Program-made: the position numbers and the translations under genes
NCBI GenBank assembly: GCA_004431415.1
Contig: QPMI01000138.1
Coordinates: 124,001 to 188,000, forward strand
Source of the DNA: Cyanophora paradoxa CCMP329
Taxonomy: Eukaryota; Plantae; Glaucophyta
Direction: 5' to 3'
Length of the DNA: 64,000 nt
Notes under the pieces: generated by a model
What the model saw: the letters and a program-made list of their open reading frames with translations, nothing else
Told to the model about the DNA's origin: nothing
Databases searched by the model: none
In this document: positions 19,501-63,180 of the stretch, in pieces
Position numbering within the stretch: position 1 is the first letter of the stretch
How the letters are laid out: every line of letters starts with the position of its first letter

Positions 19501-22500
19501 CTCCGTCCTCCAGAACGGCCAGCCGGTCGCGACGGTGCCGGCGGCCGGCGAGACGAACTCGTTCGTGGCGACGGGCCTGCAGCCCAACACGCCGACCGTC
19601 TTCTCGGTTGTGCCTCTCTCGCCGTCGGGCTCCCCGTCCGGCCCCGCCAGCGTGCAGGTGCCAGTGACGCCGGCGAGCGGCCTCGGCGGCGCAGGCTCGC
19701 CGGGCGCGGGCGCCGTCTCTGCTCCGTCCAACGTGCAGCTCACGAACGTCTCGACGGGCCTCCTGGGCGGCACCTCGGGCACCCTCTCGTGGAACCACCC
19801 GGCGACGGGCTCCCCGCAGAGCTACCAGATCATGAAGGACGGCGCCCCCGTCGGCACCGCTCCAGGCAGCAGCACCTCGACTAGCGTCTCGGACCTGCCG
19901 CGCGACGGCGTGGCGACGCTGAGCGTCGTGCCAATGGGACCGGGCGGCGCGCCGGGCACGGCCTCGCCCCCGCTCGCGGCGGGCATCCCCGCGAACCCTG
20001 GCGCCGGCATCACGCTGACGGCGGCGCCGGCCTCGGCCTCGAGCGCGCGCCTCTCGTGGAACCGGCCGCAGGCGGCGCTGGCCCCACCTCGCAGTGCGCA
20101 GAGCGGGCTCAGCGCAATGCTTTCGCTTCCATTTTTGCGGCGGCTATGCTGATTGAGCGAGCTGCGTGCGCGCCTGCAGGTTTGCCGTCCTCAAGAACGG
20201 CCAGCAGATCGCGACCGTGCCTGCGACGGGCGCCGACACGAACACCTTCACTGCAACGGGCCTGCAGCCCAACGCCCCGCGGCCTTTTCGGTGGTGCCGC
20301 TCTCGCCGTCGGGCGCGCCGAGCGGCCCGGCCAGTCCGCAAGTCCCCGTCACGCCGTACGCGGGGGCCGGCGGCGCGGGCTTTGGCCCCGGCGCCTCCTC
20401 GCCCTCCGCCCCCTCGAACCTGCAGCTCACAAGCGTGTCGCCCTCGGGCGGAAGCAGCGCCTCGGCCACCCTCTCGTGGAGCCCGCCGGCGACGGGCGCG
20501 CCGGCGAGCTACCAGATCGTGAAGGACGGCGCCCCCGTGGGCACCGTCTCGGGCAGCAAGACCTCCGCAACTGTCTCCGACCTGCCGCGCGGCGGCGTCG
20601 CGAACCTCAGCGTCGTGCCCGTCAGCCCCGGCGGCGCTGCGGGCACGCCGTCGCCGTCCCTTGCCGCGGGCATCCCGTCGAACCCGGGCTCCGGGCTCGT
20701 GCTCACGGCCACGCCGACCTCGGCCTCGAGTGCGCGCCTCTCGTGGAACCGCCCGCAGGGCGGCGCCGGCGCTCCGTGCGTGCCCGACCCTGCCCGCCCG
20801 CCCCGCCCCGGAGCATGGGCGGGCCGGGTGTTTCGCGGCGCGAGGCTGACGCGGAGGCGTGTTTCGCGCAGGGCGTCGTACTCCGTCCTCCAGAACGGCC
20901 AGCCGGTCGCGACGGTGCCGGCGGCCGGCGAGACGAACTCGTTCGTGGCGACGGGCCTGCAGCCCAACACGCCGACCGTCTTCTCGGTTGTGCCGCTCTC
21001 GCCGTCGGGCTCCCCGTCCGGCCCCGCCAGCGTGCAGGTGCCAGTGACGCCGGCGAGCGGCCTCGGCGGCGCGGGCTCGCCGGGCGCGGGCGCCCTCTCT
21101 GCTCCGTCCAACGTGCAGCTCACGAACGTCTCGACGGGCCTCCTGGGCGGCACCTCGGGCACCCTCTCGTGGAACCACCCGGCGACGGGCTCCCCGCAGA
21201 GCTACCAGATCATGAAGGACGGCGCCCCCGTCGGCACCGTTCCAGGCAGCAGCACCTCGACTAGCGTCTCGGACCTGCCGCGCGACGGCGTGGCGACGCT
21301 GAGCGTCGTGCCAATGGGACCGGGCGGCGCGCCGGGCACGGCATCGGCCCCGCTCTCTGTTGGCGTCCCGTCGAGCCCTGGTGCGGGCATCACGCTGACG
21401 GCGACGCCGGCCTCGGCCTCGAGCGCGCGCCTCTCGTGGAACCGGCCGCAGGGCGGCGCTGGCCCCACCTCGCAGTGCGCAGAGCGGGCTCAGCGCAATG
21501 CTTTCGCTTCCATTTTTGCGGCGGCTATGCTGATTGAGCGAGCTGCGTGCGCGCCTGCAGGTTTGCCGTCCTCAAGAACGGGCAGCAGATCGCGACCGTG
21601 CCTGCGACGGGCGCCGACACGAACACCTTCACTGCAACGGGCCTGCAGCCCAACGCCCCCGCGGCCTTTTCGGTGGTGCCGCTCTCGCCGTCGGGCGCGC
21701 CGAGCGGCCCGGCCAGTCCGCAAGTCCCCGTCACGCCGTACGCGGGGGCCGGCGGCGCGGGCTTTGGCCCCGGCGCCTCCTCGCCCTCCGCCCCCTCGAA
21801 CCTGCAGCTCACAAGCGTGTCCCCCTCGGGCGGAAGCAGCGCCTCGGCCACCCTCTCGTGGAGCCCGCCGGCGACGGGCGCGCCGGCGAGCTACCAGGTC
21901 ATGAAGGACGGCGTCCCCGTGGGCACCGTCTCGGGCAGCAAGACCTCGATGAGCGTCTCGAACCTGCCGCGCGACGGCGTGACGTCTCTGAGCGTCGTGC
22001 CTCTGAACCCGCGCGGCGAGCCGGGCACGGCCTCGCCCCCGCTCGCGGCGGGCATCCCGGCGAACCCTGGCGCCGGCATCACGCTGACGGCGATGCCGGC
22101 CTCGGCCTCGAGCGCGCGCCTCTCGTGGAACCGCCCGCAGGGCGGCGCCGGCCCCACTGCGCAGTGCGTCGAGCCGATTCTGCGAAACCGTTTTGTTTTC
22201 GCGGCGATGCTGATGGGCTGGCCCGCCCGCGCGCCCGCGTGCAGGTTCGCTGTCCTCAAGAACGGCCAGCAGATCGCGACGGTTCCTGCGACGGGCGCCG
22301 GCCCGATCACCTTCACGGCGACGGGCCTGCAGCCCGGCGCCCCCGCCGTCTTCTCGGTGCTGCCGCTCTCGCCGGAGGGGGGGGCGAGCGGCCCGGCCAG
22401 CCCGCAGGTCCCCGCCCCGCCGTCCTCTGGTGGCGGCGGTGCGGGGGCAGCCCCGAGTCCGCAGGCGCCCTCGAATCTGCAGCTCTCAAGCGTCTCCGCT

Positions 22501-24250
22501 GGCGTCCTGGGCGGCACGGGCGCGACGCTCTCGTGGAGCCCGCCCGCATCCGGCGCGCCGGCGAGCTACCAGGTCGTGCAGGACGGTGCGGTCGTCGCCA
22601 CAGTGCCGGGAGTGCAGACTGTGGTGAACGTATCCGGTATTCCGACGGACGGGGTGTCAGCGACGACGTTCCAGGTCGTCCCCCTCAACGCACAGGGCGC
22701 AATGGGGCCGGCGTCCTTCCCCTTCTCGGCGGGCGCGGCGCCTTCACCCAACTCTGGCATCAACCTCACCGCCGCCCCGGCCTCAACCAATGGCACCAGC
22801 GCCGTGCTATCGTGGAGCACTCCGACCGGCCCGGCTGCCATCAACCTCTCTTCGTGCGTCATGAGAATAATATCGAAATTAATCCCGGGGCTCGAGTGGC
22901 GTTCTACTAAGCTAGCTTACGTTGGCGGTGCGCAGGTACGCCGTCATGCTTAACGGCCAGCGCATCGGGGCAGTGCCGGCAACGGGTGCCGTGTCCAATT
23001 CCTTTACGGCGACGGGTCTCCCGGTGGGCGCGCCGGCGGTCTTCTCGGTGGTTCCAATGTCGGCCGCGGGTGGCCCGACGGGCGCCGCCAGCAACTCTGT
23101 CCCGCTCTCGGGCTCCACTACCATGGCCAGCGCCAATGGAGCCAATCTCGCAGCTGTCAATGCCAATAGAGCTGGATCAGGGGCGGCTCCAGATGATCTG
23201 GCCCCCTCTGGCCTTCGTCTAACCTCCTCCCCCACGTCAACAACTGGTCGGGGAGCGTCCTCCGGAACGCTCTCATGGAAGCACCCGGCGGCCGGCCCCC
23301 CTGCAGTGTACGCCGTCATGCAGGACGGTAAAGTTCTGGGCACAATCCCCGGTAGCCAGACCTCGTTCAACGTCCCAGCGGGGCCCCGCACAGCGGCTGC
23401 AGCTGGAACTCCCCAAGCATCTGCGTCGAAGTACGTCATCGTCCCAATGTCCGCTCAAGGCGCAGCCGGCACACCTTCGTTCCCGCTCGTCGTCTCTTCG
23501 GCCCCGCCCCGGAGCGGCGGGCTCACCATGGCAGCAACTCCCATCGTTCCGGACGCATCGGCGGCAGAGCTCACATGGGATGCCCCTGTAAAGGCCCATC
23601 AGATTAGCGGGTGCGTCAGTTTTGAGGTTGACGTCTCCCTCTCTCTAGATCTATATCGCTCGTGTACATCGGATACAATTTTCTGATATTACTCGAACAG
23701 CTACGCCATCATGGTGAACGGGCAGCACACGGCGGTCGTGCCGCCGTCGACGTCGGGCACCGGGCAGAACTCGTACACGGCGACGGGCTTGCCGCCGGGC
23801 GCGGTCGTCGAGGTGGTGCCCCTGCAGTCCAGCTCGAGGGCGGCGGGCGCGCAGTCCGCCGCTGGCGGCGCCAGCCTCGCACTCCCGCTCCCGAGCACTG
23901 GGCGCGGGGATGCCACGTACTCGACATCGGCTGCCGCGACGGCCCCGGGAGCTCCGAGCCCTGGGGCGCCTGCGGACCTCCAGCTCACGGATTTGGATAG
24001 CCCGCCTTTCGGCGACACGACGGGCACCCTCACGTGGAAGCACCCAGCGACTGGAGCACCCGCCTCGTACACCGTCATGCAGGGGGGGATGCCTATTGCA
24101 TCCGTTCCAGGCACTCAGACCTCGTACAAGTGCCAGAACCTGCCATCGGGGGAGGCAGTGCAGTTGGCAGTTGTGCCAATGTCCGCGAGCGGCGCCCCGG
24201 GGCCCTCCTCGCATGCGCTGAACGCCGTATGCATCCCTTGCATGCTCGCG
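1..24250 (+). CDS. Giant polycystin-1/REJ-like type I membrane protein: Ig/REJ repeats - GAIN/GPS - 1 TM - about 39 FN3-like repeats (multi-exon, 5' end upstream of window, 3' end uncertain)
   Basis: Exon peptides resemble REJ modules (DGSPSNDP; CKIEPPEGIVFRDRFTVSCWDW..YPLQY). After the TE-bearing intron come NP|FSIE, LLFWNATRASWDRCG, and exons 10200-10235 plus 10302-10400, which splice to GTWYARGRCTHL|TTFTV (GPS consensus CxHL/TxF). The in-frame exon from 10477 encodes a TM segment LIAGITAGVGAAAVLAAAAYVY followed by TSREK, then the FN3-like array. Confidence 0.75.
4300..4345 (+). repeat. 46-bp host-derived duplication, left copy (right copy 9695-9740)
   Basis: cctgcatgacgatcgcgaagaatccggtgcttatattttgctataa is identical at both sites. 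It spans a host exon end (CMTIAKNP) and the GT donor. Confidence 0.95.
4346..4506 (+). repeat. 161-bp element repeat A1 (left terminus)
   Basis: Identical to 6393-6553. Contains ggctgcc-aaataaa-ggcagcc and the hairpin aggggcgcactta...taagtgcgcccct. Confidence 0.95.
4513..5694 (+). CDS. gag: Gag-like ORF1 with CCHC zinc knuckle and N-terminal hydrophobic/signal-like segment
   Basis: Zinc knuckle CFRCNKPGHVVKDC (CX2CX4HX4C), a coiled-coil region, and first-ORF position. The true 3' end may lie near 5600 (C6 homopolymer, and a GTGCGC donor just after it). Confidence 0.85.
   Translation: MARSRRSPSWAPLFVVVLTIILLVACAEAAQKRKSTATGARKSAKPKTATTPAPQARRSSSRLQAPANDSAEEEQPAPPPTRSRKGKEKAVSPDPDQQQSDPEDEPEDDVAVRLAQREQFGGAYDEEEQVAARNFPNLAQVDPGAAGPSTGFTRHLQGPYAVPAGNSTAPTSTKPAAGALPPAWAELLQRGIDSAVIKLQEQQQQQLGEQQKDNHEAMQLKNPWLRELALQLSQLKFQLKRCSSCTACYDHVKQSLKILDELRKRIDIRDKGGDKLAERLAGVPEEYRGTAAALAHALNIAGPEAAGGRPYVQHANPRPQHQGRDRPPSQRNSGMCFRCNKPGHVVKDCPNEPRPGWRDPPSRRARPCVDAQFSFRISLDTSVSVCSCKHKYC
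6393..6553 (+). repeat. 161-bp element repeat A2, internal between gag and pol
   Basis: Identical to A1. Preceded by gtaagcaaggctgcc-gt-ggcagccatac, which is complementary to part of A. Confidence 0.95.
6622..8586 (+). CDS. pol: DIRS-type reverse transcriptase - RNase H - adenine methyltransferase-like polyprotein
   Basis: RT motifs DLESGYHHV, LPFGLKHSP, YVDDW and FLG. RNase H motifs TDAS, WRELMAV, SDN and N..SDALSR. DIRS MT-like tail DRMASSAN..RYFS..DCF..W...NYVFP. Confidence 0.95.
   Translation: MGTAIIGHVCQCKASPHFAGGFVASCIQAAVQQWRAIGANDVVLNWILRGFPLSGARRLPAERRANHKSAAVDHQDFVRTEIQKLLRTGAIREVEEAQVNIVCSLSVVPKKTGSKLRLIWDGRPTNKGLPDIPFKYETLEHVAAMLRQGWYMFTIDLESGYHHVPVSPQDWRNMGFEFDSKFYVYTVLPFGLKHSPFAFVKIMRQVVNYFRRFGIFVVNYVDDWWFAAPTYEKACELRDFVLKTFAALKLVVNSKSELTPAQSVAFLGFIVDSARMLFEVPQDKLGRLLALIKGLLKKKKSASAREMAKVAGTLVSMARGLAPARIKTRSLFRYINVVAREWHWNHPVELTNETRRELEWWLANIHRYNGRCPIRPERLLVLTTDASHVGAGAWITTRIGDAQPVAWELEPAPFQCLWNQEEAQQISSWRELMAVLRAMQHYQGLLRNQNILVRSDNTVTVAYINNGGGRHEYLCRVAAAIWDIALLNCISIEAEHIPGVDNEWSDALSRYFYPADYSLKPGYFAMVSRTFGPFDIDRMASSANTHLNRYFSIDLNDRHAEGYDCFTATWRGARNYVFPDPNVLLHLVSHVRQCRASAVFIVPQWPSAPWWPQLQLALRAPAMVLGPAYDVCYRGPRSAQLPSWILVALYVSWE
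8742..9703 (+). CDS. Tyrosine recombinase with one frameshift near 9130
   Basis: The N-terminal domain is in 8742-9158. The catalytic domain is in the frame of 8948-9703: GLLRRGE, GSKTD, TPHGLRRGGAT, GRW, YRRY. Adding one C to ttcccctc joins the two frames. Confidence 0.9.
10690..24230 (+). repeat. Coding tandem array of FN3-like domains (about 690-bp two-domain unit, about 1385-bp higher-order unit)
   Basis: 20 copies of PSNLQL..ATLSW.PP..SY...DG..V alternate with 19 copies of LTA..A.LSWN.P..Y.V..NGQ..TNSF.ATGL.P..VFSV. Each unit has a phase-2 intron at the same position, and the introns are copied too. Confidence 0.9.
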
Positions 24251-27890: not shown

Positions 27891-28192
27891 AGGGAAGAAT
27901 GCGAACAGGTTTTCTTGCGTACCCCGCCCGTCTGAACTTCGTCGTAGGCAACTGATCGATATCTGAGAGCTCGAGCGCAGGGAGCGCGGGCCCGGGGCGC
28001 AGGCTGGATCGCTATCGTGGTCCGGTCCGATCACCCTACGTATACCTCCCGCAAATAATAATACTTGAGCTCGACCGTTGGACTGGCTCTCCGCTCTCTA
28101 AATATACAAATCCCCCTTTCCGAGATCCCCGCCCGGGCCAGGGGCCATGCGAATTCGAACGCTGCTTTCACTATACAGCTCTTGGGAGAGGG

Positions 28193-31100
28193 CTAGGACC
28201 GGTCCGCCCAGGCGAGGGCGGGGCTCGGGAGCCTCCCGAAGCTCTGCCCGTAGTACCCGTTGAAGTCCTGCGGGGTACGCGTCGGCGCAGGCGCCTACGC
28301 CCGCGCCCGGAGGGGGGTACAGGGGCGCACGAGGCGGGTGACGAGGGAGGCGAGGTGCGGGTCGGCGCCCTCGCTCGCGGCCGCCTCCGTGAGCGCCTCC
28401 ATCAGAGTCGCCAGCCCCGAGCCGAAGTCCGACTCGAACCTGGCCACCGAGGCCCCGTACTCGCGGCCGCCCGGGCCCGTGACCCGCTGCGGGGCTCGTC
28501 AGGGGGGGACGGCGTTTCTTGTTGGAGGGGGGTACGCGCCCGCGCGAGGTGCTCGGCGACGGCGCGGGCGCGCGCCTCGCGGAGGCGCGCGGGGGGGAGG
28601 AGGCCCGTCGGGTCGGCCGAGGCCCCGGAGCCGGCGCCTGCCCCCGAGCGGCTCGGACAGGGGTACGGATAAAAAGGGGGTACAGTCTCGGCGGACCGGA
28701 GGAGGCGATGGCGAGGCCGCGGGTGAACTCCTCAGTGAACTTGCCGAAGTTGACGCACGTCGCCAGGATCTTCGTCAGCGTCTGCGGGGCGAGGTGAGCT
28801 GGAGGGCCGGCCGGGTCGAGGCAGGGGAGGGGGGGTACCTGGTGGGTGGAGGGGGCGGTGAGCATGCACTGCTTCAGGCACACGTCCAGGAAGTCCTCGT
28901 GGAGCCGCAGGACCTGCCGGGTACGGGGTTCCTTCGGACCGGGGGGGGGGGGGGGGGGGGGGAAAAGGGGGGGGGGGGACCTCGTCGACGCTTCCGACCT
29001 GCGGCGGAACGGGTAAGGAAGGAAGGGGGAAAGGGATGGGAGGGGGTACCGCACCGTGCGGAACTTGGTCTCGAACTCGTGCGCATTCGGCTCGATGACC
29101 TGGGCGAAGAAGGTGTCGGTACCCCCGAGACCGACCGGCTCAGTACCCCCTGCACCTCGTACGTGACGTAGTGGAGGAGCTGGTGCAAGAAGTGGAGCAT
29201 CCGCTGCGGCGAAAGCGGGCGTGAGGGGGGTCCGGGGCGGGCGGCGCAGGCCGCGCCCCGGCGGACCTGGCGGAGGCAGAAGGCGCGGGCGAGCCCAGGG
29301 GTGGGCCCCAGCATCCCGACAATCTCCTGCAACGCCGAGGATTATCAGCGCGGGACAAGCAGGGAGAGGGGAGGGGAGGGGCCGGGTACGCGTGCCTTGG
29401 TGGAGTGGTGGGAGAGCCAGGCGGCGCAGAGGCGCCGCTCGACGTGCTTCGCGTAGAAGATGTGCCGGAAGAGCAGCTGGTACTTCGTCACCGCCTGGGG
29501 GGTACAGGAGAGTCAGAGGCGGGATGGAAGGAGGGAGGGCACAAGGATGCGCGCCTTGCGGGAGACGACGAGGGAGAGGGGCCAGCCGACGCGGTAGTCC
29601 AGCACGAAGCCCTCCACGCCTGTACCCGGGGCGGTTAGGGGGTACGGGGATGGAGAGGGGTATGGGAGGGGAAGCGGGGGTACCCTTGATCTTGGAGGAG
29701 CCGAGGATGGGCTCGGGCTCGGCCTCGAGGGGGGTGGGGCGGGCGGGGGTCGGGGGCATGCCGGGGGCGGCGGGGTGCATCTCGGCGGCCTTGCCGACGC
29801 GGACGAGCTGCTTGATGAGGGTGTAGGAGACGACGGAGCAGCGGAGGTCCTCCTTGAACGGGTCCCCCGCCGACGCCGACGTGTTCAGCGCGATCCCCAG
29901 CAGCGACTCCAGCTTCGAGACCGCCACCTGCGGGGCGCGCGCCTCAAAGAGAGAGGCGGCCGGACTGCAAGAAGCGGTGGCGGGACCTCGTGAGCGGGCT
30001 TGGCGAGCTCGTCCTCGGCGAGGTCCATGAAGTGGACGAGGAAGTCGCCGTGGCCGACGAGGAGGTACCGCCGCAGCGAGCGCAGCCGCGCCAGCAGCTG
30101 GTTCTCCTCCAGCAGCAGGCCCAGCAGCTTCGCGCTCGCGAACCCGTGCGCCCGCTCGATGCGCTCGCCGTACGCGTTCGCCTGCGCCGTGTACGCCAGG
30201 CCCTCCCCCGCGAACGGGCAGTCGATCCGCCGCCCACACTCCGCCACCACGTTCAGGTACTTGCCTGCGGGCGGGGGGGAGGGCTGAGCGGGGCGGGAGG
30301 GAAGGGTACGAGCGAAACGGCGGCGGGTACGTAGGCACCCGTGGTGAGGATCTTCTCGGCGTACTTCTTCAGGAACTCGGGTACGTGCGCCCACTCCAGC
30401 GTGTACCGCTGCTCCCAGTACCTGCGCCGCCCCGGGGCGTCAGAGGGGGGGGTACCGGATTGTTCGCGGGGTACGCGGACTTGTCGTTGAAGTCCTCGCC
30501 GACGTTCTCCTTGCGCAGGCGCTCGTTCTCCTCGATCATGAACTCGCCGTACGGGTCCCGGAACTTCCCCGTGTAGATCCAGCTCTGCGCACGCGTACGC
30601 GTACCCCCCCGCTGAGCTTCCGGGAGGAGCAGGGGCGGGGGTAGAGAAAGCACGCGACCTGCAGCATCTCGAAGTAGGGGGCGGAGGCGCGCTCGAGGAG
30701 GAACGCGAAGAGGTCGCGGGAGGCCTTGTCGCCGCCCGAGGTGGCCGAGAGGGCGTGCAGCGCGTTCAGGAGGGCGCCCCCGGAGACGCCCGGCCGCCGC
30801 GCCTCGCACGCCACCCGGTCAAGAACCTGCTCGCGCGGCGCCCGGTCAGAAGGGCGCAGGGGGAAGGAGCGGTAGGGGGGTACGGGCGGGCCTCCATGGA
30901 CTGCATGGCGGGCTGGACGAAGAACCAGAGCTTCTGGAGGGAGAGGCGCCCCAGGCGGTACTGGTGCTCCAGCTGGGCGACGAGCACGAGGAACTCTTTG
31001 CACAGCGACCGCAGGGCCGCCGAGAGCGCGTTCGCCACTGCGCCGGCCGCCGCCTCAGCTCGCGCGGCCGGGGATGGGGGCGGGGAGGGGGAGCGGGGCA

Positions 31101-38650: not shown

Positions 38651-41600
38651 ATGTCGGCCTTCGAGCCGGCTTTCGCCGGGGTCTCGACGGCCGCTCCGCT
38701 AAGAGACGGCCGCCGCCTGCCGGCCGCGAGCTGTAGTCTCGCGCAGCCTCAGGACACTCCGTCGTGCAGCACGTCCGCCTTGCCGCTGGCCGCGCCGCCG
38801 CCGCGGCCGCGCTCGTTCGACGTCGGGGTGCCGTCTCACGCGTTCAGCCCTGCAAGCTGTTCTTCCGCCAGCGCGCGGTATGGTGCAGTTCATGATGTCA
38901 ACAAGCGGAGGCATGCAGGACTTTCCCGGCCAGCGGGCGGCCGTCGCTTCCCGTCCCAATTCTGGGGCTGTCAGCGCGTGGATGCGGTCCGGAATCGCAG
39001 CCGTGGTATTCCCCAGCGACTTCCTGCGGCAGCCAGCTCGGCTGGCGAGGAAGGGACCAGCCCCGTGCGAGCGACGGCAGCTGGCCAACCAGACGCAGAA
39101 GACGCCACGGAGACCGCAGCCTCCACAGCGCCTGCGATGACGCCCAGTGCTCTTCTAATGAAGTCCTACGAGGTCGCCGCGGACGCCCACAAGCACCAAC
39201 GGCGCAAGACCGGAGAGCCGTATGTCGCTCTTTGCCCTTCATCGCCTCTCACGCCCACGTCCTCTTGACGCGTTTCTACGCAGTTACGTGACGCACTGCG
39301 TCGAAACATGCAACATCCTTGCTCGGTCTGAAAGCTTGCCGGCGGTTCGGCCCGTAGCTAACCGCTGGCGGGCAGGTTGATCAACAGCAAGGTCGGCGAC
39401 GAGAGCGTCATCGAGCGTGGATTCGAGGGCATGTTCGGCCCTAACGAGAGCAACCTCATCGCGGCAGCCATGCTGCATGACACCGTCGAGGCGAGCGCGA
39501 GCAAGCGCACGCCGCCTTTTCGGGAGCCCGAGCTCTGACGCGCTCGCCCGCAGGACACCGACCTCACGCTGGAGGACATCGAGAAGATCTTCGGCGCGGA
39601 GGTCGCGGAGATGGTTGACGGGGTGCGGGCCCCACCGCCGCCCCCGCCGCCCCGCCGTCCCGGCGAGCCGATGCGCGCGGGGGCAGGTCACTAAGCTGAA
39701 CAAGATCAACGCGCTGACGCGGACGCGGACGGCGGACCCCGAGAAAGAGCCGCCCGTGGCGGCGGCGACGTCGAGCCTGCCGCGCGGCAACGCGGACTAC
39801 CTGCGCAAGATCTTCCTCTCCATGGCCCGCGACGTCCGCGTCATCCTCATCAAGCTCGCCGACCGCCTCCACAACATGCGCACGCTCCAGGGTCCGCCCG
39901 CCCGCCCGCCCCGCACCGCAACCTCCCTCCCGCCCGCCCGAGTTGACGCGCCGGCCGCCCGCCTGCGCAGGCCTCTCGCGGCCGAAGCAGATCAAGATCG
40001 CGCAGGAGACGCTGGACATCTTCGCGCCGCTGGCCTCGCGCCTGGGCATCGGCCTGGTCGAGGCCGAGCTGGAGGGTGCGCGCCGCCCGCCGCCCGCCGC
40101 CCGCCGCCCCCGCCCTCCGGCGCTGACGCCGGCGCCGCGCAGACCTGTGCTTTCAGTACTTGCACCCGACGCTGCACGAGGAGCTTGCGGGGCAGGCGGC
40201 GGCCCGCGAGGCGGAGAGCGCCAGCTACCGCGAGCGGGTCGAGCGCACCCTCAAGGTGCCGCACGCCCCTCCGCCTCCGTCCCTCCTCGCCCCGCGCGCC
40301 GCGCCGCGCCGAGTTGACCCCGTGGACGGCGGCAGGCGCGGCTTCACGAGGAGCACGTGCTCTCGGACATCCAGGCGGTCCCCAAGCGGCTGCAGCGCAT
40401 CCACCAGGTCATGGCGGCCACCGGGAAGGACTTCGAGCAGGCGCGCCCCCTCCCTCCCGCTTCCCCCCCTTTCCTTTCCTTTTCTTTCCTTTTCTAACGG
40501 CGCGCGGCGGAACGGGGCAGGTGTACGACGTGGAGACGATCCGCATCCTGGTACCCACCGCCCGGGACTGCTACATCGCCCTGGGGGTCGTCCACGTGCG
40601 CCCGTCGGCCCCGCCCCGCCCTCCTCCGGCGTGGCCCGAGCCCCGGGCAGAACCTGTGGAAGCCGATCCCGGGGGAGCTCCACGACTACATCGCGAACGC
40701 CAAGAACAACCACTACCAGGTACCCCCCACGCCCCGCCCCGCCCCGCCCCGCCCCCCCTCGTCCCGCCGCCTCCCCGTGAGCCGCGCCGCGCGCGCGTGC
40801 GCGCGCAGGCGCTGCACTCGACGGTGTGCGGGCTGGACGGGAAGCTCATCTGCGTGCGGATCTGCACGCGCGAGATGTTTTACCTCGCGCAATACGGCAT
40901 CGCCGCCCACTGGCGCTACCAGTCCGAGCTCGCCGTCCTCTCCTCCGTCCGCCCCCGCCCCCCCGCCCCCCGCCGCCCCCGCCGGAGCTCACGCTGGCCC
41001 GCCGGCCTGCAGGGCGACTCGCGCGAGCTCCGCTGGCTCCGCTCCGTCCTCGACTGGAAGACCGGGGACGGCCTCTTCGACGCCGAGGAGTTCATGGCGC
41101 GCCCCGGGCCCCGGGCCCCGGGCGCCCGCCTCGTCCGCGGCCCCCCGCCTCGCTCACGCCGCCCCGCAGAAGTCGGTGCGGTCGGACATCCTGCCCGAGC
41201 GGGCGATCGTCTTCACGCCCTCGGGGGCCACCGTCGAGCTCCCCCTCGGCGCCACCCCCATCGACTACGCCTACGAGTGCGCCCCGCCCGAGGCGCGCGC
41301 GCTCTGCTCTGAGCGGGCGGGGCGGGCAGGGTCGGGGGCACGGGGCTGGGCCACCGGGCGCGGGGCGCGCGCGTGAACGGGCAGTTCGTGCCGCTCAACT
41401 ACTGCCTCAAGGACGGGGACCAGGTGGAGATCATGACGTCGAAGAGCGCGCTGCGGGGCCCGCGGCTCGCCTGGCTCAACCCCCACCTCAACTACGTGCA
41501 CACGCAGCGGGCCCGCGCCGGCATCCGCTCCTACTTCGCGCTCCAGGACGAGTCCCTGAATGTCGTCGAGGGCCTGAACGAGCTCGAGCGCGAGCTCACG

Positions 41601-55707: not shown

Positions 55708-55880
55708 TTTTTTTTTTTTTTTAGATCTACGGTGGGCGTGCCCACTCGTAGTACACAACGAGGATACAAGTCACGGTATCGGGAATCACAGGGATTCGAA
55801 GTACAACGTAGCGGAAACAGCAGGAACCGAACCCGGGAATCCGGGAGGTCGTAGCACGACCTTATACCACTGCGCTAAAA
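55708..55880 (-). mobile_element. tRNA-derived SINE, family B
   Basis: Minus strand: A box TAGCGCAGTGG, B box GGTTCGGTTCC, unique body, A15 tail. Confidence 0.65.
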
Positions 55881-55881
55881 G

Positions 55882-56082
55882 TTTTTTTTTTTTTGGTGAA
55901 TTACCGGCCACAGCCTCTAGTCTACTCCAGCACTGTGGGGGCGTGTACAGGCAAGGTGGGGCATGATCGATCGGAATTATGTGGAACGGGCGGGATTTGA
56001 AGGCGTGATTCTCATCGCAGGGCGATTCGAACACGGAAGGCATGCATCGGAAAGCGTGTATGATAACCACACCGCTATGAGC
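55882..56082 (-). mobile_element. tRNA-derived SINE, family A, copy 1
   Basis: A box TAGCGGTGTGG, B box GTTCGAATC, A13 tail. Flanked by the imperfect repeat gctaaaa(aa)gtt. Inverted near-copy of 56161-56357. Confidence 0.75.
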
Positions 56083-56160
56083 GGGGGCTAAAAAAGTTAA
56101 GAATTCGAATTCAAACTGAATATTAATATATTCATGGGGCCATCCTTCATGACTTCGGAA

Positions 56161-56357
56161 CTCATAGCGGTGTGGTTATCATACACGCTGTCTAATTCAT
56201 GCCTTCCGTGTTCGAATCGCCCTGCGATGAGAATCACGCCTTCGAATCCCGCCCGCTCCACATAATTCCGATCGATCATGTCCCACCTTGCCTGTATACG
56301 CCCCCGCAGTGCTGGAGTAGACTAGAGGCTGTGGCCGGTAATTCACCAAAAAAAAAA
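56161..56357 (+). mobile_element. tRNA-derived SINE, family A, copy 2, with TSD
   Basis: Same head and body as copy 1, A10 tail. TSD atgacttcggaa at 56149-56160 and again starting at 56357. Confidence 0.8.
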
Positions 56358-57713
56358 TGACTTCGGAACTTCGGAAGAACAGCCGTTTCTTAGTTCTAGA
56401 CTTCTAGTGAAAGAACAGCTATCGCTATACGGTTGCTACCGGTAGTTCTAGTGCACATGCTGCAGCTGTGTCCTTTAGCCTAGTTAGCTCTAGTACGTAT
56501 ATACATATATAGTGCTACTTCCGAGTTATTCTCGTGCTCGTTCTCCTTATCTCTTGAGTTCTCGCGATTGTGTCCCTCGTCGTGATCCCTAGCTCTTATG
56601 GATATGTTTTGCGATCTCGATTGCCTACGACTTCTTTGATTTGTGATTGCTTTAATTTGTCGATTTTCAATTTTTCTACCTACGGGGGGTTCGCCCTTAA
56701 GGCCTTCCGTAGTCTCTCAAAAAAATTCAAAAAGGCTTCAATTCTTGAATTGCTCAACCGAACAAACATGATTTTGAAACATGCCTTCATCGTGATGATC
56801 AAAAAAATACGATGATCGGCATTCCGAAGTTCGCAATCAATTGCAAATCCGGAAATTAAGCCCCCTTGCCTCAAACAAACAACTAGGCCCCCATCTGCAG
56901 TTCTAATTGCAAGCTTATAATTAAGTTATAATCCAAACAACTTCAAGCTTGCAAGTTGGCATCAATGTTGTTGGCAAGTGAGTCCCTTAACCCGCGGCCG
57001 GTCCCTGTCGACGTCGGACCCTGCAGAGAGACTTTGGGGAGAAAGGGGGCCCGGCGGCCTTCAACTTATGCCGCCTTGTGCCGCCTGCGGCCTTCAGCTT
57101 ACGCACGTGCGCATGCACGTGCTCAGGATCCGCCCGCCGGCGCGGCCGCAGCTCGACCGGGTACCGTCGGACCGCGGCCGAGTAAACGAGCGCTTCGCCT
57201 ATCTAGCTTCCTGCTGCGAGTCCTGCGCGATATATATACCGCCGGTCGGGCATCTCCATGCCTGTCCTCGGTATCTCAGACTCTTTCTTATTTTCTTATT
57301 GACTTTCTCTACGGTACGCAACGAAATCGATATCATAGTATCGCTCAGGGCGCTGCACGGCGCTCAGATCGCGAGTTTCCGGCTGGCAAATTTTCACGTG
57401 GGCGCGCACAGTTACTGCTCGAGGGCGTGCGTTATATCGGCACCGAGGCGTGCCGCCGTGATCCCCTTGCTCATATGCACCCGGGACCCGTGAAATATTT
57501 TGGATCACGGCTTTTTGGACTTCGGATCTGAAGTGCACCATATCCATCGCAAAGGCCCAGGCTAAGGGCCCTTCCTTACTCCGGCCCACCGGATCCAGGC
57601 CAACTTGCATTATCTGCCGCGCGACATCGAAGCCTCTTTTTGTTTTGAAACATCTGCTCACTGCCATTGCAAGCACACGAGCACGCAGCGCGAAAGCTGC
57701 ATCCAGAGAGGGG

Positions 57714-57785: not shown

Positions 57786-60700
57786 CTAGTGCTTGTACTT
57801 CTTGCGGCGGCGCATGGTGTCGATGTGCTTGCGCTTGGAGGCCTCCTTGTCGCGCATGGAGCGGACCTTCTTGTGCTTGACGGAGCGGGACTGCCGGATC
57901 ATCGCGTACGCCTTGGTCTTCTTCTTCTCCTCGTTCGACAGGCTCGCCCCCTCCGCCTTCTTCCGCCGCTTGCCACCAAACTTCTCCCGCCCCTCCCGCC
58001 CCGCCTGCCGCCCGCCGTGAGCGCCGGCGGCCCCGGGGCGCGGCGGGGCGGGGCGGGGGGTACGGGCGCACGTTGACGCTGGCCATGCGCTCCTCGAGCT
58101 CGCGGCGCTTGCGTTTCCTGTACCCCTCCAGGTCCCCGGCCTCGAGTACCTCCTCGTAGTCGACCCCGCGCGCCGCCGGCGCCTCCTCCGTGCTGCGGGG
58201 CGGTGGGAGGGTCGGCGGGGGTACACTGCACCCAAGGAGGGGGGTACGCCTCCTCCACGCACTCGGCGGAGGCGATGGCGTTGAGCTTCTTGCGGGAGTT
58301 GCCGGCGGCCTTCTCGAGCGCCGCCCGCGCCTTCAGCTGCCGCAGCCGCTCGAAGTCCTCTTGGTCCAGGATCTGGCCGGGGCGGGGGGGTCAGGCCGGG
58401 GGGCAGGGCATAGGAGGGTGGGGAGAAATCGGACCCGGACGGAGTCGAGACGGGGGCCGGAGGGCGTGGAGGAGGCGGAGGCGGGGGCGCCGGGGGCGGC
58501 CGCCCCCTTGGCCGCCGCCGCCGCCTCGCGCTTGGCCTTGAAGCGCGCCAGCCGCAGCGCTCGCTTCCGCTCCTGCCGCCTCTCCTTCTTGCTCCGCGCC
58601 GCCGCCCCGGCCGCCGGCCGCACGTCGTCGTCGTCGTCCTCCTCCTCCTCCTCTTCCTCCTCTTCCTCCTCCTCCTCCCCGCCGGACCCGCTGCCGCTGG
58701 CCTCCCCGCCGCTCTCGGCCCCCTCCTCCTCCTCCTCCTCCTCGTCCTCCTCCCCCCCCTGGCCCTCGCCTTCGCTGCTGCTGCTGCTCCCGTCGCTGCG
58801 CCCGCCCCGCGCGCGTCGGCACCCGGCCCTACCCTCCCCCTGGACACCGGTACCCCCGCACCTGACGCGGATGGCCTTCTTCCCCCCCACCTCCTCGTCG
58901 GAGACGTCTACCCAGCTGCCGCCCTCCTCCTCCCCCTCCTCCTCCTCCTCCTCCTTGTCCTCGCTGTCCAGGCTCGCGCTCTCCCACCTGCCGCCCGCCC
59001 GCGTCTGCCGGAGCCAGAGGCGCCCCCCTCGAGGCGCGCACCCGTCCTCCTCCCCGCCGCTGCCCTCCTCCTCGTCCTCCTCCTCCTCCTCGTCCTCGGT
59101 GGAGAGGCCCTGCTCCTTGCGGGCGGCGCGGCGGGCCTCCTTCTCCGCGCGGCGCTGCTCGCGGGCCTCCTCGCGCTGCCGGCGCGCCTCCTCCCGCTTC
59201 TTCAGGTCCTCCTCCAGCAGCTCCAGGCCCTCTACCGCCTCCGCCGCCCGCTGCTGCCCGAACTGCAGCGGCGCCTTGCTCATGTCCGCCGTCCGCCCCT
59301 GCCGGCCCGACACCCCCGCCCGCTCAGCCCCGCCCGAGGCTCCGCCCGACGGCGCGGCGGGGCGGGGCGCACGCGGTCGCGCTTGGCGAGGAGGTGCGGG
59401 TTGGCCTCACGGAAGGTCGCGATGAGCGAGCGCGCCGCCATCACCACGCCCTTGTCCCGCGCCGTCTTGTACTGCGACAGGTCCTGCCCGCCCCCGCGTG
59501 AGCCGCGGAGGGGGGTAGTGGGGGGTAAGGATGGCGGGGGGTACCTGGAGGAGGGTCTCGTTCATGACGAGGGGCATGCGGGCGCAGATCTCGCGGATCG
59601 TGTTCAGGCTGCCGGGGTACGTGGGCGAGGTGAGGGGTACGCAATCGAGACGCGGGGCGGGGTACGACCGCACCCGACGACGACCGCCTCGTCGGCGCAG
59701 CGGTCGGAGACAAAGTTGTCGACGATCGTCTGCGGGGTAAGGGCCGGCGTCAGGCGGGGTACAGAGCGGAGCAGGCGGCTGAGTACACTAGGAGGAAACT
59801 AGGAAACTGTCGGTGTATGATAAGTCACACGCTGCCCCACCGAACAGGGGCGCGTGCGTGCCATACGGCCGTTCCCTCTGCCCTCGTTGGAAATAAGAGG
59901 GGGGCGCCGCGCGGGCGACCCGCCCCTCCACAATTCGAGGGCGCAGCTAAGACCCAAGCCCGCTTAAGAGCCTATGAACGGAATGTCGGTGTATGATAAG
60001 TCACACGCTGCCCCACCGAGCAGGGGCGCGTGCGTGCCATACGGCCGTTCCCTCTGCCCTCGTTGGAAATAAGAGGGGGGCGCCGCGCGGGCGACCCGCC
60101 CCTCCACAATTCGAGGGCGCAGCTAAGACCTAAGCCCGCTTAAGAGCCTATGAACGGAATGTCGGTGTATGATAAGTCACACGCTGCCCCACCGAGCAGG
60201 GGCGCGTGCGTGCCATACGGCCGTTCCCTCTGCCCTCGTTGGAAATAAGAGGGGGGCGCCGCGCGGGCGACCCGCCCCTCCACAATTCGAGGGCGCAGCT
60301 AAGACCTAAGCCCGCTTAAGAGCCTATGAACGGAATGTCGGTGTATGATAAGTCACACGCTGCCCCACCGAGCAGGGGCGCGTGCGTGCCATACGGCCGT
60401 TCCCTCTGCCCTCGTTGGAAAAAAGAGGGGGGCGCCGCGCGGGCGACCCGCCCCTCCACAATTCGAGGGCGCAGCTAAGACCTAAGCCCGCTTAAGAGCC
60501 TATGAACGGAATGTCGGTGTATGATAAGTCACACGCTGCCCCACCGAGCAGGGGCGCGTGCGTGCCATACGGCCGTTCCCTCTGCCCTCGTTGGAAAAAA
60601 GAGGGGGGCGCCGCGGGGGCGACCCGCCCCTCCACAATTCGAGGGTGCGGAAAATGCTCTACCCCGGCTAGCTCACAGAGCCCCGGGCGGACCTTGACGA

Positions 60701-63180
60701 GAGGCTCGACGGCGTCGGGGGGTACGTGGTCGTGGCATGCCTGCGCGGCGCACGCCAGGATTGACGTCACCTCTGCGGCGCGCGCGCTCTTAGCCCCAGA
60801 CGAGCAAGGGGGGCGGGGCGGGGGTAGAACGGGAGGGGTACGGCGGGCGGACCGTTTTGGTGGGGCTGGAGGTAGCGCTGGACGTAGGGGTACAGGTTGA
60901 GGACGATGAGCTGGTGCGTGGCCACCATCCGCGACACCAGCTGCAGCATCATGAGCCGAACCTGCGGCCGGCGGGCCGGCCGGCGTCAGCCCCGTCCTCG
61001 ATCGGCGCAGAGAGCCGGGCGGGCCCCCGAGGGGTCCCAACCAGGGGCCACCGCACCTCGAACCGCTCGTTGCAGCCGCGCAGCTTTCCGAAGAGCTTCT
61101 CAGTGAAGCCTGCGGCGGGGCGGGGGGCTCAGGAGCCGGCTGGCGGGGCGGGCGGGGCGGGCGGGCGGACCCTGTGGGTCGTGGATGAGGTGGAGGGCGT
61201 GGAAGGTCGGCGCCGCCTTGGCCCGCTGGCCCTTCTTCACCTGCACGCGCCCCCGGCCCCGGGCGTCACGCCGGCGTCGTCGGCGCGCCGGGTCGGGCGG
61301 GCGAGCTCGCCGCGCCTGCTTCAGGGCGCGCTGGATCTTCTTCTGCTTCTTCTTCTTGTTGCGGCTCGCCACGTGCGTCGCGTGGAAGATGTCTCGCGCC
61401 GTGGGCGCCAGCTTTGCCTGCCGCCCGCCCCTGTGAGCGGCCAGGGCGCCCGCCCGCCGAGCGGCCGGCCCCCCGCGCACCGCGTCGTCGCTGTCGCTGC
61501 CGCTGCCGCTCCCGTCCGAGTCGTCGTCGCCCTTCTTCCGCTTGTTCGTGAGGAAGAACTGCGTGCGCCGGGAGGCTCGCTCAGCCGGCGGTCCGGCGCC
61601 GGCCGGCGGGCGGGGCGGGGCGGGAGAAGAGAGGGCCAAGCGCGCCTGCAGGGCGGCCACGAGGATCTTGGTCACGTTGGAAAAGCACGCCGTGCTGATC
61701 ACGTTCACCGTCTTCGCGTCGTCCCTGCGCGCGCAGGCCGGTCGGTCGCATGGATGCGAGCCGGGGCCGCGGAGGCGATGGGCTGGCTGGCTTAGAGTGA
61801 ATGTCGGTGTATGATAAGTCACACGCTGCCCCACCGAGCAGGGGCGCGTGCGTGCCATACGGCCGTTCCCTCTGCCCTCGTTGGAAATAAGAGGGGGGCG
61901 CCGCGCGGGCGACCCGCCCCTCCACAATTCGAGGGCGCAGCTAAGACCTAAGCCCGCTTAAGAGCCTATGAACGGAATGTCGGTGTATGATAAGTCACAC
62001 GCTGCCCCACCGAGCAGGGGCGCGTGCGTGCCATACGGCCGTTCCCTCTGCCCTCGTTGGAAATAAGAGGGGGGCGCCGCGGGGGCGACCCGCCCCTCCA
62101 CAATTCGAGGGCGCAGCTAAGACCTAAGCCCGCTTAAGAGCCTATGAACGGAATGTCGGTGTATGATAAGTCACACGCTGCCCCACCGAGCAGGGGCGCG
62201 TGCGTGCCATACGGCCGTTCCCTCTGCCCTCGTTGGAAATAAGAGGGGGGCGCCGCGGGGGCGACCCGCCCCTCCACAATTCGAGGGCGCAGCTAAGCCC
62301 CACCGCCCATGCCCCCACGCCCCGCCCGCGATCAAATCGCAGATCAAATCGCACCAGATCTTCTTGCGGTAGAGCTCAATCATGACGTCGAGGGACTTCT
62401 TGGCGGCCTGCTGGCACGGGTCCTGCAGCATCGTGTACATGAAGTTCTGCAGCGTCTTGTTCACTTTGTTCTCTGCGCGCGTGCGTGCGTCAGGCGCCGG
62501 CGGGCGGCGCGGCGCGGCGCGGCGCGGCGCGGAGCGGGGCCTAGGGGCGCGGGCGCCGCTGCGCGTGTGTGTGGCTGGCTCGCACCCTTGTGCTTCTGGT
62601 TCATCGTCTTTATGTCGTTGACGATGTGGAGGAAGAGCTGCTGCCGGAGGGCCTTGTCCTTGCAGCGGAAGAGCTTGAAGAAGAGGGAGAGGACGCTGCG
62701 GCGGCGGTCGCACGGCGCCGGCGGCGGCGGCGGCGCGGGCGGCGCGCGGGGCGCCCGCGCACTTGGCGACGGGGATGAGGTTGCGGTTGCGCATGAGGAT
62801 GAGTGCCTGGACGAGGGTGCGCCGCAGGTCCGGGTGCAGCACGGCGTAGTGCTCCTCAAGCAGCGCCATGATCTCGTTCGGGAAGCCCGCGAGCTCCTTC
62901 GGGTAGCATAGCGTGACCTGCGGCGCCCGGGCGGCGCGATCGGCGCGTACGTGAGCGCCCCGGCGCGAGCGGGAGCGCCGGCCGAGCGGGCGAGGGGGGC
63001 GAGCCGAACCTGAGACAGGAACGATACCAGCTCGCCGAAGCCTTTCGTCTCCTTGCTCGGCGCGAGCTTGAAGATCTGGAGCTGCGAGTCGAAGTGGCGG
63101 AGCTGGAGCTCGAACTCTTCCTTGTACGCCGGGGGGTCCCTCTTACACAGGTTCTGAAGCTGAAGCAGGTCCAGCGCCAT
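57786..63180 (-). CDS. SDA1: SDA1/SDAD1 60S ribosome biogenesis factor (multi-exon)
   Basis: [67 protein letters not shown]|[53 protein letters not shown]. Confidence 0.96.
59808..60648 (-). ncRNA. Intronic tandem array of 5 putative H/ACA snoRNA copies (176-bp period)
   Basis: Units start on + at 59808, 59984, 60160, 60336 and 60512. Minus strand reads hairpin GCCCUCG..CGAGGGC, hinge AGAGGGAA, hairpin CGGCCGUAUG..CAUACACCG, then ACA. The pocket UGGCAC/GACUU is complementary to 18S AAGUC-UG-GUGCCA. Confidence 0.8.
61802..62297 (-). ncRNA. Second intronic tandem array of 3 copies of the same putative H/ACA snoRNA
   Basis: Units start on + at 61802, 61978 and 62154. Near-identical to the 5-copy array and sense to SDA1. 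Confidence 0.8.

What the first reader, a model, noticed from the sequence alone, without database searches (positions are those of the whole stretch)
59808..62297. Tandemly amplified, homogenised H/ACA snoRNA arrays (5+3 copies) in two introns of SDA1
Seen: a 176-bp unit repeats almost perfectly 8 times in two different introns, sense to the host gene. Each unit folds as hairpin-hinge-hairpin-ACA plus a spacer of about 40 nt. In the 3' hairpin, the pocket strands UGGCAC and GACUU sit directly under the stem GCACGC/GCGUGU. They pair with the conserved 18S sequence AAGUC-UG-GUGCCA, leaving UG unpaired 16 nt from the ACA, which is classic guide geometry. Established: the equivalent human U (18S 609) is pseudouridylated via SNORA24, and ribosome-biogenesis genes are typical snoRNA hosts. 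The 5' pocket (AAUUG / CUUAUU) could weakly target 18S AAUGAG-UA-CAAUU. Inference: what looks like a minisatellite is a homopolymeric intronic snoRNA polycistron under concerted evolution, spread between introns. It would need endonucleolytic processing, or may be a snoRNA-derived mobile unit. The H box is non-canonical (AGAGGGA).
Basis: partly seen in the sequence, partly recalled or inferred. Interest (0 to 1): 0.85.

Follow-up and report, generated by a model that had tools for sequence, protein, structure and literature searches.

The report
Tandem intronic H/ACA snoRNA gene arrays
Two introns of the ribosome-assembly gene SDA1 carry 5 and 3 near-identical copies of a box H/ACA guide RNA predicted to pseudouridylate a universally conserved 18S rRNA uridine next to the decoding-site 530 loop, a gene layout already known from green algae and plants.

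Summary
A 176-bp unit (137-nt core plus 39-nt spacer) occurs 5+3 times at 99% identity. Both arrays lie inside canonical GT..AG introns of a minus-strand SDA1 gene, in sense orientation. Spliced RNA contigs prove both introns.

K-mer depths in a DNA run fit about eight genomic copies, so this is not an assembly expansion.

Each core folds as hairpin-hinge-hairpin-ACA. The 3' pocket pairs (4-6 + 5 bp, all Watson-Crick) with 18S AAGUC-UG-GUGCCA. That uridine is human U609 (SNORA24-guided) and yeast U560. It sits 16 nt from the ACA. Shuffled guides reach this match in 4 of 3000 trials.

The Chlamydomonas reinhardtii family CrACA04 (six isoforms) carries the same pocket.

No stable RNA, RNP or pseudouridine was shown, and the species' own 18S was not available.

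The H box deviates from ANANNA at one position.

Tandem homologous snoRNA clusters in introns are documented for Chlamydomonas and plants, and other first-reader notes report further arrays in this genome.

Verdict: a real, probably functional H/ACA array. It is a new member of a known kind, of modest interest.

The parts
57786..63180 (-). Host gene: approximate span of the SDA1 coding region
   Evidence: Pfam SDA1_HEAT on three ORF pieces. Match to human SDA1 chain 8fl2_NT. Spliced RNA contigs. The N-terminal ORF starts at 63180 and the C-terminal ORF ends at 57786. The exons were not joined into one model.
61725..62354 (-). Intron A (630 nt, GT..AG), carrying 3 snoRNA copies
   Evidence: The RNA-contig loose end at 61725 continues with letters found at 62356 onward. 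Boundaries set by the GT/AG rule.
59730..60692 (-). Intron B (963 nt, GT..AG), carrying 5 snoRNA copies
   Evidence: The RNA-contig loose end at 60693 continues with the letters of 59700-59729. Boundaries.
62151..62287 (-). Copy A1, 137-nt H/ACA core (5' apical loop variant C)
61975..62111 (-). Copy A2 (5' apical loop variant C)
61799..61935 (-). Copy A3; ACA+3 ends 74 nt before the 3' splice site
60509..60645 (-). Copy B1 (loop variant C; 5' pocket A48U)
60333..60469 (-). Copy B2 (5' pocket A48U)
60157..60293 (-). Copy B3
59981..60117 (-). Copy B4, the reference copy used for folds and numbering
59805..59941 (-). Copy B5 (3' apical loop C>U; ACA followed by GUU); ends 75 nt before the 3' splice site
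60118..60156 (-). 39-nt spacer, representative. The others are 62112-62150, 61936-61974, 60470-60508, 60294-60332 and 59942-59980.
   Evidence: Five spacers are identical and one has a single change. GC is 0.54 against 0.66 in the core.
60049..60055 (-). Hinge H-box-like motif AGAGGGA in copy B4
   Evidence: Hinge reads CAGAGGGAA. It deviates from ANANNA at one position. It aligns to the hinges of Rfam SNORA57 and the Telomerase-vert H/ACA domain, both sub-threshold.
59984..59986 (-). ACA box of copy B4
   Evidence: ACA at unit positions 132-134, at the foot of the 3' hairpin and followed by UUC.
60034..60039 (-). 5' guide strand UGGCAC of the 3' hairpin pocket (copy B4)
   Evidence: Pairs with 18S GUGCCA, duplex -8.5 kcal/mol. 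U79 and G80 are in the lower stem and C84 in the upper stem of the minimum-free-energy fold.
59998..60002 (-). 3' guide strand GACUU of the 3' hairpin pocket (copy B4)
   Evidence: Pairs with 18S AAGUC. There are 16 nt from G116 to the ACA.
62355..62472 (-). SDA1 exon upstream of intron A (encodes [15 protein letters not shown]...KKIW)
   Evidence: junction
60693..60772 (-). SDA1 exon upstream of intron B
   Evidence: Spliced RNA contigs in X15, X17 and X19

Best explanation
Each 137-nt core is a box H/ACA small nucleolar RNA gene. The eight copies are transcribed by RNA polymerase II as part of the SDA1 pre-mRNA, three in one intron and five in another. The hairpins would assemble with the Cbf5/dyskerin, Nop10, Nhp2 and Gar1 proteins. 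After splicing, or independently of it, cuts in the 39-nt spacers and exonuclease trimming up to the protected RNP would release up to eight identical snoRNAs per host transcript.

The pocket of the 3' hairpin pairs with 18S rRNA on both sides of a U-G dinucleotide (5'-AAGUC / UG / GUGCCA-3'), at the foot of helix 18, just 5' of the 530 loop. It presents that U to Cbf5 for conversion to pseudouridine. The site is yeast U560 and human U609.

The arrays arose by local tandem duplication and by copying between the two introns, recently or with continuing homogenisation.

Shown here: the repeat and its copy number, its intronic sense position, splicing of the host, the fold, the boxes, and the specificity of the guide complementarity. 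Inferred: a stable RNA, the RNP, the processing route and the pseudouridine itself.
For: - **Repeat and copies:**
- **Introns and host expression:** spliced RNA contigs from three runs and loose-end letters; GT..AG ends.
- **Fold:** the minus-strand centroid is hairpin-hinge-hairpin-tail, -64.5 kcal/mol, z -2.55, against z -1.4 for the plus strand. Every copy keeps both hairpins when the whole 630-nt intron is folded.
- **Guide specificity:** the pairing is 5+6 Watson-Crick bp. It was the only strong hit of the 3' pocket in 109 eukaryotic rDNA loci; the hit at the target site itself is by construction, since the loci were fetched with that sequence. Shuffled guides reach 11 or more Watson-Crick pairs in 4 of 3000 trials.
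- **Geometry:** 16 nt from the pocket top to the ACA.
- **Target site:** it lies in the most conserved 18S block (PMC3940700). It is a mapped pseudouridine guided by SNORA24 in human (PMC6776443).
- **Counterpart in another alga:** C. reinhardtii CrACA04, with six isoforms, has the same pocket strands UGGCAC and GACU(G/U)A (PMC5122169 supplement).
- **Variant placement:** all three variable core sites fall in apical loops or the 5' pocket, none in stems, boxes or the 3' pocket.
- **Array ends:** at both ends of each array the end copies are whole; no copy is truncated.
- **Weak Rfam matches:** sub-threshold alignments to H/ACA models place the hinge and the ACA correctly.
Against: - No discrete RNA of about 135 nt was seen. 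Only one of three RNA runs holds a low-depth contig on the unit (2.9 against 36 for the mRNA), and it includes spacer, so it may be pre-mRNA.
- The H box is not ANANNA.
- The minimum-free-energy fold closes part of the pocket, which leaves 4+5 bp freely available.
- No Rfam family reaches its threshold, SNORA24 included.
- The spacers are as conserved as the cores, so the identity reflects recent amplification and not selection.
- Arabidopsis has no pseudouridine listed at the equivalent site.
- The species' own 18S was not available.
- No orthologous locus was found for a covariation test.
Confidence: 0.85

Rival explanations
1. A recently amplified minisatellite that derives from a snoRNA but is now inert. 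The copies look like an H/ACA RNA but are not matured into a stable, active RNP, for instance because of the deviant H box. Another locus guides the modification, or it is not made.
For: Spacers and cores are equally conserved, so nothing shows selection on the copies. The H box departs from ANANNA. Stable RNA is absent from the contigs laid. No Rfam family reaches threshold.
Against: All eight copies are complete, with intact stems, ACA and guide. Variants avoid the structural and guide positions. K-mer depth indicates no further copies elsewhere that could serve as the real gene. The same guide exists as a multi-isoform family in Chlamydomonas.
Confidence: 0.08
2. A mobile element derived from a snoRNA (a retroposed or transposed unit) that inserted into two introns and then expanded.
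For: The same unit lies in two separate introns whose flanks are unrelated.
Against: There is no poly(A) tract and no convincing target-site duplication. Array A begins inside a spacer (10 nt of spacer retained), which points to DNA-level copying of an array segment. Both sites are in one gene only 1.1 kb apart. K-mer depth of about 8 leaves no room for dispersed copies.
Confidence: 0.03
3. A structured intronic element that acts on the host gene (splicing or expression control of SDA1) or serves as a precursor of small regulatory RNAs, rather than as a modification guide.
For: The introns fold into very stable modular structures. The last copy ends 74-75 nt from the 3' splice site in both introns.
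Against: This does not explain the exact bipartite complementarity to a known pseudouridylation site at the correct distance from the ACA. Both introns are spliced out cleanly in all three RNA runs.
Confidence: 0.04

Closest known systems
Chlamydomonas reinhardtii CrACA04 H/ACA snoRNA family (Chen et al. 2008; sequences in the PMC5122169 supplement)
   Same: It is a multi-copy family of six isoforms in a green alga. The 3' hairpin pocket strands are UGGCAC and GACU(G/U)A, so it has the same predicted 18S target. The distance from the pocket to the 3' box is similar, about 15 nt.
   Different: The stem sequences, apical loops and the whole 5' hairpin are unrelated to the unit here. The exact strings of this unit are absent from the supplement files that are held. 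The host gene and layout of CrACA04 could not be checked because the 2008 paper is not held.
Human SNORA24 (ACA24)
   Same: It guides pseudouridylation of the same 18S uridine, U609 in helix 18 beside the 530 loop. The site identity follows from the SCARLET oligonucleotides in PMC6776443.
   Different: There is no detectable sequence or covariance-model similarity. SNORA24's second target (U863) has no counterpart in the 5' pocket here. As far as I recall, it is a single gene copy per host intron in human rather than a tandem array.
Intronic clusters of homologous snoRNA genes in Chlamydomonas, rice and other plants
   Same: Several tandem copies of one snoRNA sit inside an intron of a protein-coding gene and are processed from a polycistronic precursor. 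The families arise by local duplication (the title of Chen et al. 2008; the abstract figures are from my memory). First-reader notes report other such arrays in this same genome.
   Different: Here the same array occupies two introns of one host gene and the copies are almost identical, spacers included.

Membership tests
Box H/ACA snoRNA | Hairpin-hinge-hairpin-tail secondary structure | tested here: met
   Centroid fold of the minus strand. It is kept by all copies in the whole-intron fold. The plus strand lacks it.
Box H/ACA snoRNA | ACA box at the foot of the 3' hairpin, 3 nt from the mature 3' end | tested here: inconclusive
   ACA is present at positions 132-134, right after the 3' hairpin. 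The mature 3' end is not mapped, because contigs cannot show ends.
Box H/ACA snoRNA | H box ANANNA in the hinge | tested here: not met
   The hinge CAGAGGGAA holds AGAGGG / AGGGAA, each one position off ANANNA. A similar AgAggGAA hinge is the consensus of Rfam SNORA57, so the deviation may be tolerated.
Box H/ACA snoRNA | Pocket with bipartite complementarity flanking an unpaired U-N of rRNA, 14-16 nt from the box | tested here: met
In the 3' hairpin, 5 + 6 Watson-Crick bp surround UG of 18S (4 + 5 without fraying of stem ends), 16 nt from the ACA. 4 of 3000 shuffles do as well.
Box H/ACA snoRNA | Stable RNA bound by Cbf5/dyskerin, Nop10, Nhp2 and Gar1; target U converted to pseudouridine | not testable with these tools
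   Only contig-level RNA data were available.
Rfam SNORA24 (RF00399) or any other Rfam H/ACA family | Covariance-model score at or above the gathering threshold | tested here: not met
   No match at gathering. The best are SNORA57 at 15.4 bits (threshold 40) and the Telomerase-vert H/ACA domain at 14 bits (threshold 70).
CrACA04 family of C. reinhardtii | Same guide strands in the 3' hairpin, plus sequence homology of the rest | tested here: inconclusive
   The guide strands are shared. Stems and the 5' hairpin are not alignable by eye. This makes it a functional counterpart, with orthology unproven.
Intronic homologous snoRNA gene cluster (Chlamydomonas / plant type) | Two or more tandem copies of one snoRNA inside a spliced intron of a protein-coding gene, in sense orientation | tested here: met
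snoRNA-derived retroposon (snoRT) | Poly(A) tail and target-site duplications at dispersed insertion sites | tested here: not met
   The flanks show no A-tract and no clear duplication. Depth fits no copies beyond the eight.

The most novel reading that the evidence does not exclude
The arrays are more than a routine cluster. The identical 74-75-nt distance from the last copy to the 3' splice site in two introns with unrelated flanks would mark a splicing-coupled positional constraint on the maturation of H/ACA arrays. The 5' hairpin would also guide a second, so far unmapped pseudouridine 43 nt upstream in 18S (GGAAUGAG-UA-CAAUUU, yeast U517), using a non-canonical pocket with three unpaired guide nucleotides.
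Probability: 0.1. Interest if true: 0.55.

Novelty: new member of a known kind. Interest (0 to 1): 0.3.

Why it matters
This annotates eight unrecognised non-coding RNA genes. It explains what looks like an intronic minisatellite in a ribosome-biogenesis gene.

It predicts that the 18S pseudouridine beside the 530 loop, linked to decoding accuracy in human cells through SNORA24, also exists in this alga. A Chlamydomonas family carries the same guide.

It adds one case to the picture that some algae amplify snoRNA genes as homologous intronic arrays. It does not reveal a new mechanism.

Tried and rejected
- **Rfam:** the gathering scan of the whole window found nothing. Permissive scans gave only sub-threshold H/ACA-like matches.
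- **Orthologous loci for a covariation test:** one SDA1 exon, given by reference, was searched against 1.84 billion representative proteins. Of the four hits looked up, one had no contig on record. One was an intronless transcript contig (L001). Two were genomic contigs of distant relatives with 46-47% GC and neither the guide motif nor unit similarity.
- **Protein search with a spurious ORF across the unit:** this was meant to catch arrays in relatives and found no candidates.
- **Viral contigs:** a scan for an 18S pattern found nothing.
- **Chen et al. 2008:** the paper (PMC2390600) is not held, so the host gene of CrACA04 stays unchecked.
rejected as canonical.
- **Mobile-element reading:** rejected.
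- **Assembly-expansion reading:** rejected on depth ratios.
- **Identity of the organism:** it is coded in the tools. I did not try to unmask it beyond noting that it bears an RSH (RelA/SpoT) gene and is very GC-rich.
- **Spliced model:** Exons were used one at a time by reference.
- **Metagenomic rDNA loci:** they were used only as an anonymous panel. I did not check their origin individually, and the search pattern also occurs in human 18S, so some could be human rDNA. The seven whose 18S context I printed do not read like the human sequence as I recall it.
Full report
**Observation**

Tandem Repeats Finder reports two arrays of period 176 with 99% matches and no indels. They lie at 59808-60645 (4.8 copies) and 61799-62297 (2.8 copies).

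Anchoring on the ends of the unit gives eight complete 137-nt cores on the minus strand and six 39-nt spacers. A 41-nt probe from the 3' hairpin matches these eight places and nothing else in the window, with 0 expected by chance.

The array ends keep whole copies. Array B starts at the first base of a core and ends just after an ACA. Array A starts 10 nt inside a spacer and ends 3 nt after an ACA. No copy is truncated.

**Host gene and introns**

ORF pieces on the minus strand match Pfam SDA1_HEAT in colinear order. They also match human SDA1 in pre-60S structures (8fl2_NT).

Contigs of three RNA runs from three studies were laid on 60470-61798. They give seven spliced exons between the arrays. 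Their loose ends join 60693 to the letters of 59700-59729, and 61725 to the letters from 62356 onward.

With the GT/AG rule, intron A is 61725-62354 (630 nt) and intron B is 59730-60692 (963 nt). Both are GT..AG on the minus strand. The arrays are therefore intronic, in sense orientation, and the host is expressed and spliced.

Exons were used singly, by reference.

**Copy number**

In DNA run X1 the unique flank has word depth 29.
- The contigs on the unit have depths of 142.8, 195, 213.7, and 154.4 plus 71.3.
- That is 4.9, 6.7, 7.4 and 7.8 times the flank.
- These values track the number of assembled copies that share each stretch.
- The two variants of the 5' apical loop split 5.3:2.5, where the assembly has 5:3.

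The tool warns that such depths are not a formal copy number. X1 may also be the sample the assembly came from.

Still, the read-level data fit about eight copies in the genome and none elsewhere. This argues against both an assembly expansion and dispersed copies.

**Anatomy**

The minus strand of a core folds, in the centroid structure, as follows (-64.5 kcal/mol, z -2.55).
- A 5' hairpin with an internal loop.
- A 9-nt hinge, CAGAGGGAA.
- A 3' hairpin with an internal loop.
- A tail, ACAUUC.

The plus strand gives z -1.4 and no such layout. When the whole 630-nt intron A is folded, each of its three copies keeps both hairpins.

The hinge motif AGAGGGA is one position off the ANANNA consensus. 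Rfam's SNORA57 consensus hinge reads much the same.

Rfam gives no family-level match. The weak alignments to SNORA57 and to the H/ACA domain of vertebrate telomerase RNA place the hinge and the terminal ACA where expected.

I see no UGAG (CAB-box-like) motif in either apical loop (UGCUCGGU and CCGC), read by eye.

**Guide function of the 3' hairpin**

In the 3' hairpin, UGGCAC lies just 5' of the upper stem and GACUU just 3' of it. They pair with 18S GUGCCA and AAGUC, leaving U-G unpaired. There are 16 nt between the top of the pocket and the ACA.

The minimum-free-energy fold pairs U79 and G80 in the lower stem, and C84 with G116. The freely open guide is therefore 4+5 bp, and 6+5 bp if the stem ends fray.

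The target lies in the most conserved block of eukaryotic 18S, yeast positions 547-589 (PMC3940700). This makes the target yeast U560.

The SCARLET oligonucleotides of McMahon et al. identify human U609 as the same uridine. They show that SNORA24 guides its pseudouridylation, with effects on tRNA selection and accuracy (PMC6776443). Arabidopsis lists no pseudouridine at the equivalent position.

I scanned 109 eukaryotic rDNA loci taken from metagenomes.
- The 3' pocket hit only this site with 5+6 Watson-Crick pairs.
- The hit at the site itself is by construction, because the loci were fetched with that sequence.
- The informative result is that nothing comparable occurs elsewhere in 18S-28S.
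- Shuffled guides reach 11 or more Watson-Crick pairs on a full rDNA in 4 of 3000 trials.

The organism's own 18S could not be obtained.

**Counterpart in Chlamydomonas**

The supplement of Patra Bhattacharya et al. 2016 lists six isoforms of C. reinhardtii CrACA04. Their 3' hairpin reads ...CAUC-UGGCAC-stem...stem-GACU(G/U)A-GAUGG..., which is the same pocket.

The stems and the 5' hairpin differ from the unit here, and the unit's own strings are absent from the supplement files held. This is a functional counterpart in another alga and not the same sequence.

**The 5' hairpin**
- In the canonical register (guide strands directly under the upper stem), no conserved rRNA target appears in the panel.
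It is present in 22 of the 109 loci.
- That proposal leaves U12, G13 and G14 unpaired beside the upper stem and puts the target 18 nt from the H box. Copies B1 and B2 carry A48U, which breaks the longer helix.
- Shuffled guides do as well in 1.1% of trials.

I regard the 5' pocket as an orphan, or at best a non-canonical candidate.

**Evolution**

The cores differ at three sites only.
- G/C in the 5' apical loop, with C in copies A1, A2 and B1.
- A/U in the 5' pocket, with U in copies B1 and B2.
- C/U in the 3' apical loop, with U in copy B5.

None touches a stem, a box or the 3' guide. The spacers are just as uniform, with one change in six. The identity therefore reflects recent amplification or homogenisation and is not evidence of selection.

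The C variant is shared between the two arrays. This fits copying or gene conversion between introns.

The flanks show no poly(A) and no convincing target-site duplication. Array A begins within a spacer, as expected for DNA-level copying of an array segment.

**Expression of the snoRNA itself**

This remains unshown. One RNA run holds a 164-nt contig on spacer plus core at depth 2.9, against 36 for the mRNA. The two other runs hold none.

These are contigs of runs whose library type is not on record. They can show neither ends nor abundance of a 135-nt RNA.

**Comparison with what is known**

Clusters of snoRNA genes processed from polycistronic precursors, including intronic ones, are the rule in plants. 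C. reinhardtii snoRNAs are mostly multi-copy families in polycistronic clusters (PMC7671301; the title of Chen et al. 2008). From memory, that paper reports 76 clusters, most of them intronic and 77% made of tandem homologous copies.

Other first-reader notes on this same genome describe further intronic snoRNA arrays, including a six-copy H/ACA array. These notes are unchecked.

The finding is therefore a convincing new member of a known kind. The small twists are that two introns of one host carry the same array, and that the last copy ends 74-75 nt before the 3' splice site in both.

**Verdict**

The H/ACA reading is supported with confidence 0.85. The novelty class is a new member of a known kind, with interest 0.3.

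Noticed in passing
window 59730-59805 and 61725-61799: In both introns the last snoRNA copy (ACA+3) ends 74-75 nt upstream of the 3' splice site, although the two downstream flanks are unrelated in sequence. This could be chance or a positional constraint on processing.
   Followed up: partly
window 61559-61645 (minus strand): One short SDA1 intron has GC..AG ends, seen as a CT..GC joint in three RNA runs. The neighbouring introns are only 61-95 nt long and GT..AG.
   Followed up: no
window 4513-8586 (+): ORFs with a gag-like zinc knuckle (zf-CCHC) and with reverse transcriptase plus RNase H lie in a lower-GC stretch (53-58%). This is probably an LTR retrotransposon.
   Followed up: no
window 55786-56360: Nearly identical short ORF translations appear on both strands (MIDRNYVERAGFEGVILIAGRFEHGRH...), which indicates an inverted repeat of about 250 bp in a lower-GC intergenic stretch.
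   Followed up: no
window 39417-41312 (+): A long ORF has HD_4 and RelA_SpoT domains, an RSH-type (p)ppGpp synthetase/hydrolase. This suggests a plastid-bearing alga.
   Followed up: no
window 10500-24000 (+): About 13 kb at roughly 75% GC is full of long overlapping ORFs. One of them has a fibronectin type III domain.
   Followed up: no
window 60598 (and 60422): The assembly has the UUUUUU variant of the 5' pocket in copies B1 and B2. DNA run X1 shows only the UUAUUU form, at full depth. This is a strain difference or a dropped variant.
   Followed up: partly
window 28098-30338 (-): An ORF matches the C-terminal domain of gamma-tubulin complex components.
   Followed up: no
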